From contig NC_043017.1 in the NCBI RefSeq assembly GCF_006345805.1, positions 20,522,001-20,586,000 on the forward strand: a DNA stretch of 64,000 bases, given 5' to 3'. Source of the DNA: Octopus sinensis (Eukaryota). Each line of letters opens with the position of its first letter. Position 1 is the first letter of the stretch. This document shows positions 53,755 to 53,831 of this stretch, one piece after another. Made by a program: the position numbers and the translations under genes. The notes under the pieces are model-generated. The model searched no databases. It was not told the DNA's origin and saw only the letters and a list, made by a program, of their open reading frames with translations.

Positions 53755-53831
53755 CTTTCCTGCTGATGAGAGTTTCACCAAGCAAATTACTTTATTTGCT
53801 GAAGATTGCTCGAAACCATGGTCCAGGAAAG
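53755..53831 (+). ncRNA. Type I hammerhead ribozyme (Penelope/retrozyme-type), apparently intact
   Basis: Helix I CTTTCCTG (53755-62) pairs with CAGGAAAG (53824-31). Core CTGATGA (53763-69). Helix II GAG...CTC closes a long hairpin (AGCAAAT/ATTTGCT). GAAA (53812-15), palindromic helix III ACCATGGT, cleavage triplet GTC (53821-23). Confidence 0.88.

What the first reader, a model, noticed from the sequence alone, without database searches (positions are those of the whole stretch)
53755..53831. Apparently intact hammerhead ribozyme with GUC site and palindromic helix III
Seen: perfect 8-bp helix I (CTTTCCTG/CAGGAAAG), exact CUGAUGA and GAAA core, G10.1-C11.1 closing pair, a 42-nt branched helix II hairpin, helix III ACCAUGGU (perfect palindrome) and the optimal GUC triplet. 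Established: Penelope-like elements and animal retrozymes carry minimal type I hammerheads whose palindromic helix III lets them cleave as dimers. Inference: this copy could still cut any plus-strand transcript after nt 53823, for example terminating or co-transcriptionally cleaving a host pre-mRNA or lncRNA. The unusually long helix II could supply tertiary contacts.
Basis: partly seen in the sequence, partly recalled or inferred. Interest (0 to 1): 0.9.

Follow-up and report, generated by a model that had tools for sequence, protein, structure and literature searches.

The report
Relic hammerhead in Penelope-type repeat
The hammerhead ribozyme motif is real, but it sits in one decaying copy of a short mobile-element family of the Penelope/retrozyme kind that is already known to carry such ribozymes, and alone it probably cuts RNA poorly or not at all.

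Summary
The motif at 53755-53831 (+) is exactly as described: 8-bp helix I, CUGAUGA, G10.1-C11.1, 42-nt helix II, GAAA, palindromic ACCAUGGU, GUC with C17 at 53823. It is not chance. A generic descriptor finds 1 hit in the window against 0.01 per simulated window.

It lies in a ~462-nt repeat unit with no ORF (window copy 53445-53962, flanked by (TA)n). At least 111 copies in this 2.7-Gb animal genome match within 3 mismatches. The copies show Penelope-like insertion signatures: 5' truncation, partial tandems, head-to-head inverted copies and (TA)n targets. The genome holds abundant RT+GIY-YIG Penelope-like elements whose hammerheads have the same build.

Within the family the copies decay neutrally, with no covariation. 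Across sister families that share GAAACCAUGGU, helices I and II covary strongly (74% paired against 58% in shuffles, 0/500), so the fold was selected in the source elements.

The window copy is about 5-6% diverged, in the ribozyme as in the rest. It is one of about 3 copies that keep a fully canonical core, which fits chance survival. It is the only copy in 64 kb. Its monomer is predicted to misfold, and published tests of such minimal hammerheads found no single-motif cleavage. Known kind, ordinary member, low interest.

The parts
53416..53443 (.). (TA)14 microsatellite on the 5' side of the insertion. It is the probable target sequence.
   Evidence: Most family copies are bounded by (TA)n on one or both sides. 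(TA)n is a reported preferred target of Penelope-like elements (PMC8557442).
53445..53544 (-). Inverted 102-nt terminal piece ('tail', segments A+S). It is the reverse complement of the rcS+A' end seen downstream of segment B in other copies.
   Evidence: inverted repeat 53443-53500 / 53545-53602, 58-nt arms, 90% complementary; in L002, L004, L005, L009, L012, L017 and L024 the same sequence follows B in the opposite orientation and is then followed by (TA)n.
53545..53602 (+). Segment A' (58 nt), which precedes the body in partial-tandem copies.
   Evidence: the order rcS-A'-B recurs in L004, L006, L007, L014, L015, L023, L024, L026 and L028.
53603..53962 (+). Segment B (360 nt), the body of the repeat unit. 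It contains the hammerhead and has no ORF.
   Evidence: It differs at 19 of 349 aligned positions (5.4%) from a consensus of 29 other copies. No ORF of 80 aa or more is listed within 53445-53962. It has no tRNA-like part.
53755..53762 (+). Hammerhead helix I, 5' strand (CUUUCCUG).
   Evidence: The consensus has 7 bp and the eighth pair is private to this copy. The four core-proximal pairs covary across sister families.
53763..53769 (+). Core C3-A9 (CUGAUGA).
53770..53811 (+). Helix II, a 42-nt interrupted hairpin. It has G10.1-C11.1, a proximal stem weakened in this copy, the distal stem AGCAAAU/AUUUGCU and the loop UACUUU.
   Evidence: The proximal stem covaries across families: GAGCU/AGCUC, GAACU/AGUUC, GACU/AGUC, AACU/AGUU, CUUG/CAAG.
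53812..53815 (+). Core G12-A15.1 (GAAA). C11.1-G12 forms a CpG.
   Evidence: In 19 of 31 aligned copies position 11.1 is U opposite G10.1.
53815..53822 (+). Helix III, ACCAUGGU, a perfect palindrome. As a monomer it forms 2 bp plus a CAUG loop. In a dimer it forms an 8-bp intermolecular helix.
   Evidence: the homodimer MFE forms the 8-bp helix.
53823..53823 (+). C17 of the GUC triplet. The predicted scissile bond is 53823/53824.
53824..53831 (+). Hammerhead helix I, 3' strand (CAGGAAAG).
53961..53986 (.). (TG)3(TA)10 microsatellite on the 3' side of the insertion.

Best explanation
The motif is a genuine type I minimal hammerhead of the kind carried by Penelope-like retroelements (PLEs) and their ORF-less derivatives, the animal 'non-LTR retrozymes'. 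It sits in one old, rearranged copy of a ~462-nt non-autonomous repeat: an inverted terminal piece followed by a 5'-truncated plus-strand copy, inserted in a (TA)n microsatellite.

Inferred life cycle of the source elements:
- More-than-unit transcripts carry two hammerheads.
- The two pair through the palindromic ACCAUGGU to form a double hammerhead and cut after GUC.
- The released unit, possibly circularised by a tRNA ligase, is copied by the RT of an autonomous PLE.
- The copy is inserted at (TA)n nicked by the PLE's GIY-YIG endonuclease.
- This mechanism leaves 5'-truncated, partial-tandem and head-to-head inverted copies.

The window copy is a neutral relic of that process. Its core survived about 5-6% divergence by chance. 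As a lone monomer with a 2-bp helix III, a weakened proximal helix II and a competing GUUUC/GAAAC pairing, it most likely has little or no self-cleavage in a host transcript.

Shown: the motif, family membership, the insertion architecture, cross-family covariation, the PLE-rich genome and the fold predictions. Inferred: dimer cleavage, the circular intermediate, mobilisation by a PLE, and inactivity of this copy.
For: - Motif read directly and not chance.
- Family: 45 scored matches at 85-94% identity from 1119 candidates; 111 copies within 3 mismatches of a 30-nt helix II probe, reversed-pattern control 0.
- Unit and architecture: A'(58)+B(360)+rcS(44) with no ORF, variable 5' ends, partial tandems, head-to-head (-,+) pairs, a terminal piece at one end only, and (TA)n flanks. 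These are the PLE insertion hallmarks described in PMC8557442.
- PLEs in the genome: at least 147 GIY-YIG matches from 4846 candidates, with ORFs up to 883 aa. The ORFs carry RVT_1 plus a C-terminal GIY-YIG.
- Hammerheads next to those ORFs have the same build: helix I of 4-7 bp, a long helix II, a 6-nt palindrome after GAAA, then UH. The L049 hammerhead lies upstream of the ORF in the same orientation, inside an inverted repeat.
- Superfamily: 229 matches to CTGATGA-N30-50-GAAACCATGGTH, control 0.
- Covariation of helices I and II across sister families: 74.0% paired against 57.9+-1.2, covariation score 0.537 against 0.251, 0/500 shuffles reach either value, slid controls 20-44%.
- Neutral decay within the family: 88.6% against 88.2% paired. 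Only 10 copies genome-wide keep a strict 28-position pattern, 3 of them with C11.1. 9 of 31 copies pass a relaxed descriptor. The window copy differs at 5/81 positions in the hammerhead region and 19/349 in B.
- Folding: the monomer MFE is not the hammerhead fold, and the homodimer MFE is a double hammerhead, -51.8 against 2 x -21.6 kcal/mol.
- Literature: PLE minimal hammerheads, dimer logic, no single-motif activity (PMC4209133); animal retrozymes (PMC7229834); retrozymes as PLE derivatives (bioRxiv 10.64898/2026.07.22.740005).
Against: - No autonomous PLE sharing sequence with this family was found.
- No locus of this family with two same-strand hammerheads one unit apart was seen among 30 loci or the listed pattern hits, so the dimer/circle step is not demonstrated for this family.
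- Nearest-neighbour folding ignores the tertiary structure of the hammerhead core, so the predicted misfolding is only indicative.
- The published activity tests were on other species' motifs.
- No expression data were available.
Confidence: 0.8

Rival explanations
1. This particular copy is a working ribozyme that cleaves a host pre-mRNA or lncRNA co-transcriptionally. That is the first reader's inference: an exapted hammerhead like the intronic hammerheads of amniotes.
For: All core positions are canonical, as are G10.1-C11.1 and GUC, with an 8-bp helix I. It is one of only about 3 copies in the genome that keep this state. The homodimer is predicted to form a double hammerhead.
Against: - The hammerhead has diverged as much as the rest of the copy.
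- The share of copies passing the strict pattern (10 against the 111 found with a different probe) is near a rough neutral expectation for 28 fixed positions at about 7% divergence (0.93^28 = 0.13, my own arithmetic).
- There is no partner copy within 64 kb.
- The monomer is predicted to misfold.
- Single minimal hammerheads were inactive in vitro (PMC4209133).
- No coding or transcript evidence was found near it: six non-repetitive window ORFs gave no Pfam match.
Confidence: 0.05
2. The family is a true retrozyme that still produces ~462-nt circular RNAs from tandem loci, and the window copy is simply a non-productive member.
For: The unit is ORF-less, AT-rich and 462 nt long, with a type I hammerhead and partial tandems. 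A sister family has same-strand hammerheads 444 nt apart, at C1:104608110 and C1:104608554. The genome holds PLE families with many identical intact copies that could supply RT.
Against: The copies of this family that were sampled are 3-10% from their consensus, and none is nearly identical to another. No full dimer with two hammerheads was seen for this family. Most copies carry U at 11.1 or other damage.
Confidence: 0.12
3. The repeat is a LINE-dependent SINE that happens to carry a hammerhead, like the Sm-alpha elements of Schistosoma, and not a PLE-dependent element.
For: It is short, has no ORF, is interspersed and has variable 5' ends.
Against: It has no tRNA-, 5S- or 7SL-like head and no poly(A) or LINE-like tail. 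Its ends abut (TA)n, and it shows frequent head-to-head inverted copies and partial tandems, which are PLE hallmarks (PMC8557442). Its hammerhead has the same build as those beside RT+GIY-YIG ORFs in this genome.
Confidence: 0.03

Closest known systems
Minimal hammerheads of Penelope-like elements (Cervera & De la Pena 2014, PMC4209133)
   Same: Type I topology, canonical core, G10.1-C11.1, a helix II longer than in canonical hammerheads, and a very short helix III with a palindromic sequence that allows a dimeric double hammerhead. Hundreds of copies are scattered in the genome, mostly single, and some lie as close pairs on opposite strands.
   Different: This family has no unpaired nucleotide between A9 and G10.1 (the sister families do). 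Helix II is much longer, 42 nt against 7-8 bp. No RT/GIY-YIG ORF could be linked to this family.
Animal non-LTR retrozymes (Cervera & de la Pena 2020, PMC7229834; Li et al. 2026, bioRxiv 10.64898/2026.07.22.740005)
   Same: An ORF-less, AT-rich unit of a few hundred nt with one type I hammerhead. It is probably dependent on PLEs. Dimer-dependent cleavage is expected, as for the newt and axolotl motifs.
   Different: The described retrozymes form tandem arrays from dimers to large multimers and have loop 1-loop 2 contacts in many invertebrates. This family shows only 1.0-1.5-unit insertions and inverted pairs. Helix I is a plain open duplex. No circular RNA evidence is available.
Canonical EN+ Penelope/Poseidon-type PLEs of the same genome (loci L046-L049)
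   Same: Hammerheads with a long helix II and a 6-nt palindrome after GAAA (CAUAUG, CUCGAG, CAAUUG, CAGCUG). The insertion architecture also matches, with direct and inverted flanking repeats.
   Different: They encode 775-883-aa RT+GIY-YIG proteins and share no detectable nucleotide similarity with the window's element.
Rfam Hammerhead_1 (RF00163) and related Rfam hammerhead models
   Same: The same catalytic core and three-helix junction.
   Different: No match at gathering score. The only hammerhead model that surfaces in E-value mode is RAGATH-1-hammerhead at 14 bits against a 56.3-bit threshold.

Membership tests
Hammerhead ribozyme, type I | Conserved core: C3 U4 G5 A6 N7 G8 A9 ... G12 A13 A14, with A15.1-U16.1 and H17. 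| tested here: met
   CUGAUGA 53763-53769, GAAA 53812-53815, U16.1 53822, C17 53823.
Hammerhead ribozyme, type I | Three helices around the core, with helix I open-ended, supported by compensatory changes. | tested here: met
   The helices were read. There is no covariation within the family. Across sister families sharing GAAACCAUGGU, 74.0% of cells pair against 57.9% in shuffles (0/500), all 12 pairs tested show double changes, and slid controls give 20-44%. Helix III was fixed by the search pattern and is therefore untested.
Hammerhead ribozyme, type I | Match to a curated Rfam hammerhead covariance model. | tested here: not met
   0 hits at gathering score. RAGATH-1-hammerhead scores 14 bits, E=9, in E-value mode. 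This probably reflects the 42-nt helix II and minimal helix III, not absence of the fold.
Hammerhead ribozyme, type I | Site-specific self-cleavage 3' of H17. | not testable with these tools
   Needs in vitro transcription or mapping of RNA ends.
Hammerhead ribozyme, type I | Loop 1-loop 2 tertiary contacts that give activity at physiological Mg2+. | tested here: inconclusive
   Helix I is an uninterrupted 8-bp duplex with no loop or bulge. The helix II loops differ in sequence and length between sister families. No conserved contact candidates were seen, but contacts cannot be excluded from sequence alone.
PLE-type minimal hammerhead (PMC4209133) | A very short helix III with a palindromic 15.2-16.2/loop 3, allowing a dimeric ribozyme. 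| tested here: met
   ACCAUGGU is a perfect palindrome. The homodimer MFE forms the 8-bp intermolecular helix III.
PLE-type minimal hammerhead (PMC4209133) | G10.1-C11.1 conserved and helix II larger than usual. | tested here: met
   G53770-C53811, helix II 42 nt. The family consensus has C/U at 11.1 inside a CpG.
PLE-type minimal hammerhead (PMC4209133) | An extra unpaired nucleotide between A9 and G10.1. | tested here: not met
   In this family G10.1 follows A9 directly. Sister families have CUGAUGA-A-GACU or CUGAUGA-U-CUUG.
PLE-type minimal hammerhead (PMC4209133) | Located in the flanking repeat (pLTR) of an element that encodes RT plus a GIY-YIG endonuclease. | tested here: not met
   All copies that extend 5' of segment B run into A', rcS and the end of B again, giving a 462-nt unit without an ORF. 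There is no similarity to the fetched PLE loci. The feature is met for other hammerheads in the same genome (L049). The search for a partner was cut short.
Animal non-LTR retrozyme (PMC7229834) | A short ORF-less unit of low GC content carrying a type I hammerhead. | tested here: met
   The unit is 462 nt. GC is about 0.37 locally. No ORF of 80 aa or more lies within the element.
Animal non-LTR retrozyme (PMC7229834) | Head-to-tail tandem repeats, each unit with a hammerhead (dimers to multimers). | tested here: not met
   Only partial tandems of 1.0-1.5 units with one hammerhead were seen in 30 loci. No same-strand pairs about 462 nt apart appear among the listed hits. The window holds a single copy. 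A sister family has a 444-nt same-strand pair.
Animal non-LTR retrozyme (PMC7229834) | [quoted passage not shown] | not testable with these tools
   No transcriptome data were available.
PLE-mediated insertion (PMC8557442) | 5' truncation, partial tandems, an adjacent inverted 5'-truncated copy, an extension at one end, and a bias to (TA)n targets. | tested here: met
   Segment maps of 30 loci. Nine (-,+) close pairs appear among the pattern hits. The window copy is (TA)14 | inverted terminal piece | A'-B | (TG)3(TA)10.

The most novel reading that the evidence does not exclude
The window copy, one of about three in the genome with a fully canonical core, is not a mere relic. On this reading it cleaves the RNA it is embedded in, either alone with host chaperones or by pairing in trans through ACCAUGGU with transcripts of other family members, and so acts as a transposon-derived RNA-processing site in a host gene or lncRNA.
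Probability: 0.04. Interest if true: 0.65.

Novelty: new member of a known kind. Interest (0 to 1): 0.22.

Why it matters
Hammerheads in Penelope-like elements and animal retrozymes are well documented, so this adds a further family and not a new principle. Three things give it modest value.

- It shows that an 'apparently intact' ribozyme in a genome scan can be a chance survivor among a hundred or more decaying repeat copies.
- It shows that Rfam models miss this class.
- It points to a set of sister families in one genome whose helices covary cleanly. That set could be used to build a better model of Penelope-type hammerheads and to test what these ribozymes do in retrotransposition.

Tried and rejected
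- Rfam at gathering and E-value thresholds: no usable hammerhead hit.
- Chance motif: rejected by shuffles, simulations and the repeat family.
- Covariation within the family: none beyond shuffles, as expected for neutrally decaying copies. I therefore moved to sister families.
- Searching the whole genome with my covariance model R1 (built): the tool does not allow it for this genome. I used patterns instead.
- Autonomous partner: the GIY-YIG search and seven fetched PLE loci show other hammerhead types but no similarity to the window's element.
- SINE head or tRNA-like part: none.
- 5' ends of copies at the cleavage site (B221/222), which would be a footprint of past ribozyme processing: only two of about 30 loci start near it (L007 at 221, L028 at 230), which is not convincing.
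- Coding context in the window: six non-repetitive ORFs gave no Pfam match.
- Organism: not established. The assembly size and contig count remind me of an octopus assembly, but that is from memory and untested.

Full report
OBSERVATION

- Helix I: CTTTCCTG (53755-62) pairs with CAGGAAAG (53824-31).
- Core: CTGATGA (53763-69), then GAAA (53812-15).
- Helix II: a 42-nt insert (53770-53811) closed by G10.1-C11.1.
- Helix III: ACCATGGT (53815-22).
- Cleavage site: C17 at 53823.

Two details need correcting. Helix II is an interrupted hairpin, not a branched one. It has a proximal stem, an internal loop, a 7-bp distal stem AGCAAAU/AUUUGCU and a 6-nt loop. The eighth helix I pair is private to this copy.

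The motif is not a chance match. A core pattern gives 1 hit and none in 100 shuffles. A generic hammerhead descriptor gives 1 hit in the window against 0.01 per simulated 64-kb sequence.

Rfam does not detect it. There are no hits at gathering score in the window, and only RAGATH-1-hammerhead at 14 bits in E-value mode.

WHAT IT SITS IN

The window comes from a 2.72-Gb genome in 13,516 contigs. It is rich in microsatellites, AT-rich, and plainly an animal genome.

The 201 nt around the motif match 45 scored places at 85-94% identity, from 1119 candidates. A 30-nt helix II probe finds 111 copies within three mismatches, with none for the reversed control.

I mapped 30 loci against the window copy. 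They show a unit of A' (58 nt), B (360 nt, holding the hammerhead) and rcS (44 nt), about 462 nt in all and without an ORF. Copies that extend 5' of B always run into A', rcS and then the end of B again.

The insertions share these features:
- variable 5' ends;
- partial tandems of 1.0-1.5 units;
- frequent head-to-head inverted copies, including nine close (-,+) pairs;
- a 102-nt terminal piece (rcS+A') present at only one end;
- (TA)n on the flanks.

The window copy reads (TA)14 | inverted terminal piece 53445-53544 | A' 53545-53602 | B 53603-53962 | (TG)3(TA)10. It is the only copy in the window. These are the insertion signatures described for Penelope-like elements: 5' truncation, pseudo-LTRs from partial tandems, an adjacent inverted truncated copy, an extension at one end, and (TA)n targets (PMC8557442).

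PENELOPE-LIKE ELEMENTS IN THE SAME GENOME

A GIY-YIG profile gives at least 147 matches from 4846 candidates, with open frames up to 883 aa. Three such ORFs carry RVT_1 plus a C-terminal GIY-YIG domain.

One of these families has many copies that are 100% identical over the 250-aa query, several with intact 775-aa frames, so it looks young. Locus L047 has 637-bp direct repeats, 100% identical, 5.9 kb apart.

Hammerheads found beside these ORFs share the window motif's build. Helix I is 4-7 bp, the core is CUGANGA, the helix II insert is 14-54 nt, and GAAA is followed by a 6-nt palindrome (CAUAUG, CUCGAG, CAAUUG, CAGCUG, CGAUCG) and then UH. In L049 the hammerhead lies upstream of the ORF in the same orientation, inside a 227-bp inverted repeat.

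I could not link an autonomous element to the window's own family.

IS THE FOLD SELECTED?

Within the family it is not. The 31 aligned copies pair at 88.6% against 88.2% in shuffles, which is neutral decay from a common source.

The consensus is a good hammerhead, with a 7-bp helix I and a 5-bp proximal helix II GAGCU/AGCUC. C11.1 sits in a CpG, and it is U opposite G10.1 in 19 of 31 copies.

Across the superfamily the fold is selected. The pattern CTGATGA-N30-50-GAAACCATGGTH has 229 matches and none for the control. The matches fall into several sister families with different helices.
- Proximal helix II is GAGCU/AGCUC, GAACU/AGUUC, GACU/AGUC, AACU/AGUU or CUUG/CAAG.
- Helix I is UUUCCUG/CAGGAAA, UUCCCA/UGGGAA, CCUA/UAGG, CUAUG/CGUAG or GCGGUUA/UAACCGC.

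On 61 distinct rows, spliced to helix I, the cores and the five closing positions of helix II, 74.0% of cells pair against 57.9+-1.2 in shuffles. The covariation score is 0.537 against 0.251. No shuffle out of 500 reaches either value, and sliding the partner gives 20-44%.

Three caveats apply. The core and helix III were fixed by the search pattern. The rows are related to one another. The distal helix II was left out. Even so, the slid controls keep relatedness and are far lower.

THIS COPY

Segment B differs from a consensus of 29 other copies at 19 of 349 positions (5.4%). The 81-nt hammerhead region differs at 5 of 81. The ribozyme has therefore decayed like the rest of the copy.

Genome-wide, 10 copies keep a strict 28-position pattern. 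Three of them have C11.1: the window copy, C16:49194596 (identical to the consensus) and a copy truncated in helix I. Of the 31 aligned copies, 9 pass a relaxed descriptor and 3 keep G10.1-C11.1. At about 7% divergence roughly 0.93^28, or 13%, would be expected to survive (my own arithmetic). The 'intact' state therefore fits chance survival.

The private changes weaken the proximal helix II from 5 bp to 3 bp plus one G.U. They also create GUUUC, which pairs with the core GAAAC in the monomer MFE (-21.6 against -17.4 kcal/mol for the hammerhead fold). The hammerhead-like fraction of the ensemble is about 3e-4. The consensus monomer also prefers a non-hammerhead fold.

The homodimer MFE of both the window copy and the consensus is a double hammerhead with the 8-bp ACCAUGGU helix (-51.8 against 2 x -21.6 kcal/mol for the window copy). 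That margin corresponds to a dissociation constant of roughly a micromolar (my estimate). Pairing of a single-locus transcript in trans is therefore unlikely.

Published experiments on Penelope-type minimal hammerheads found no detectable cleavage for single motifs and low activity for dimers and trimers (PMC4209133). Amphibian retrozyme hammerheads with a similar helix III cleave well only as dimers (PMC7229834).

MECHANISM (INFERRED)

In the source elements, more-than-unit transcripts carrying two hammerheads would form the double hammerhead and cut after GUC. The unit RNA, possibly circularised by a tRNA ligase as shown for other retrozymes (PMC7229834), would be reverse-transcribed by a PLE RT. 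It would then be inserted at (TA)n nicked by the GIY-YIG endonuclease. I did not find a locus of this family with two same-strand hammerheads one unit apart, though a sister family has a pair 444 nt apart. The window copy is best read as a neutral relic of this process.

COMPARISON AND NOVELTY

The motif works like, and is built like, the minimal hammerheads of Penelope-like elements and animal non-LTR retrozymes. It fails two membership features in the strict sense. No RT/GIY-YIG ORF is linked to it, which the PLE pLTR definition requires. No tandem arrays were seen, which the retrozyme definition requires. The best description is a non-autonomous, PLE-type element that carries a hammerhead. 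That makes it a new member of a known kind. A recent preprint argues that animal retrozymes are non-autonomous PLE derivatives (bioRxiv 10.64898/2026.07.22.740005), and this family fits that view.

VERDICT

The classification as a Penelope/retrozyme-type hammerhead is supported. The functional inference for this copy is not supported by anything I could test and is unlikely on the published activity data. Interest is low.

Noticed in passing
G000 genome-wide; examples C2:87525362-87525422 (+), C1:104608110-104608168 (+), C1:19102361-19102423 (-): Most sister families that share GAAACCAUGGU(C/A) lack a standard pair in the 10.1/11.1 register. They read CUGAUGA-A-GACU...AGUC-A-GAAA, A-AACU...AGUU-A, or U-CUUG...CAAG-U, and 48 of 61 distinct rows are unpaired there. 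The rest of helix II still covaries. This looks like a symmetric A.A or U.U next to the core. Only the 5' extra nucleotide is described for PLE minimal hammerheads.
   Followed up: partly
L049 (G000:C8:18814500-18823500) and the places listed: One Penelope-like family has many copies that are 100% identical over the 250-aa query, several with intact 775-aa RT+GIY-YIG ORFs (150 scored hits from 20,226 candidates). It looks recently or currently active. Its hammerhead (CUUUC CUGAUGA ... GAAA CAUAUG UC GAGAG) lies upstream of the ORF inside a 227-bp inverted repeat.
   Followed up: partly
L047 (G000:C1:207473500-207481500), 1-637 and 5936-6572: Direct repeats of 637 bp, 100% identical, flank two overlapping ORFs of 479 and 781 aa. 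This looks like a pseudo-LTR arrangement of a young PLE. My descriptors found no hammerhead in this locus.
   Followed up: no
window 53443-53602: The inverted terminal piece and segment A' form a long hairpin: 58-nt arms, 90% complementary, with a 44-nt spacer. Any transcript of it would be a long dsRNA stem. It draws spurious sub-threshold miRNA-precursor matches in Rfam (MIR6288, 38 bits against a 74-bit threshold).
   Followed up: partly
G000:C1:104608110-104608168 and C1:104608554-104608613 (+); C1:91796859 and C1:91797894 (+); C2:199402846-199403867: A sister family has same-strand hammerheads 444 nt and 1035 nt apart, and a block of four hammerheads alternating in strand. These are possible true tandem (retrozyme-like) and complex inverted arrays.
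   Followed up: no
window, throughout (e.g. 1268-2429, 36243-37583, 43582-44309, 57827-58430): The window is dense in (TA)n, (CA)n and related microsatellites, which produce long spurious ORFs rich in Y, I, H and T. No convincing protein-coding exon was seen. The ORF at 63523-63999 runs off the window end, has a cysteine-rich tail (…GPTCPRCG) and gave no Pfam match.
   Followed up: partly
window 52477-52740, 52701-52952, 8984-9430, 19719-20156: Similar peptide strings recur in ORFs at several places in the window (…[19 protein letters not shown]…, …HxCRWHVKST…). This suggests another interspersed repeat family unrelated to the hammerhead element. Two of these ORFs (19719-20156, 52477-52740) gave no Pfam match.
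   Followed up: no
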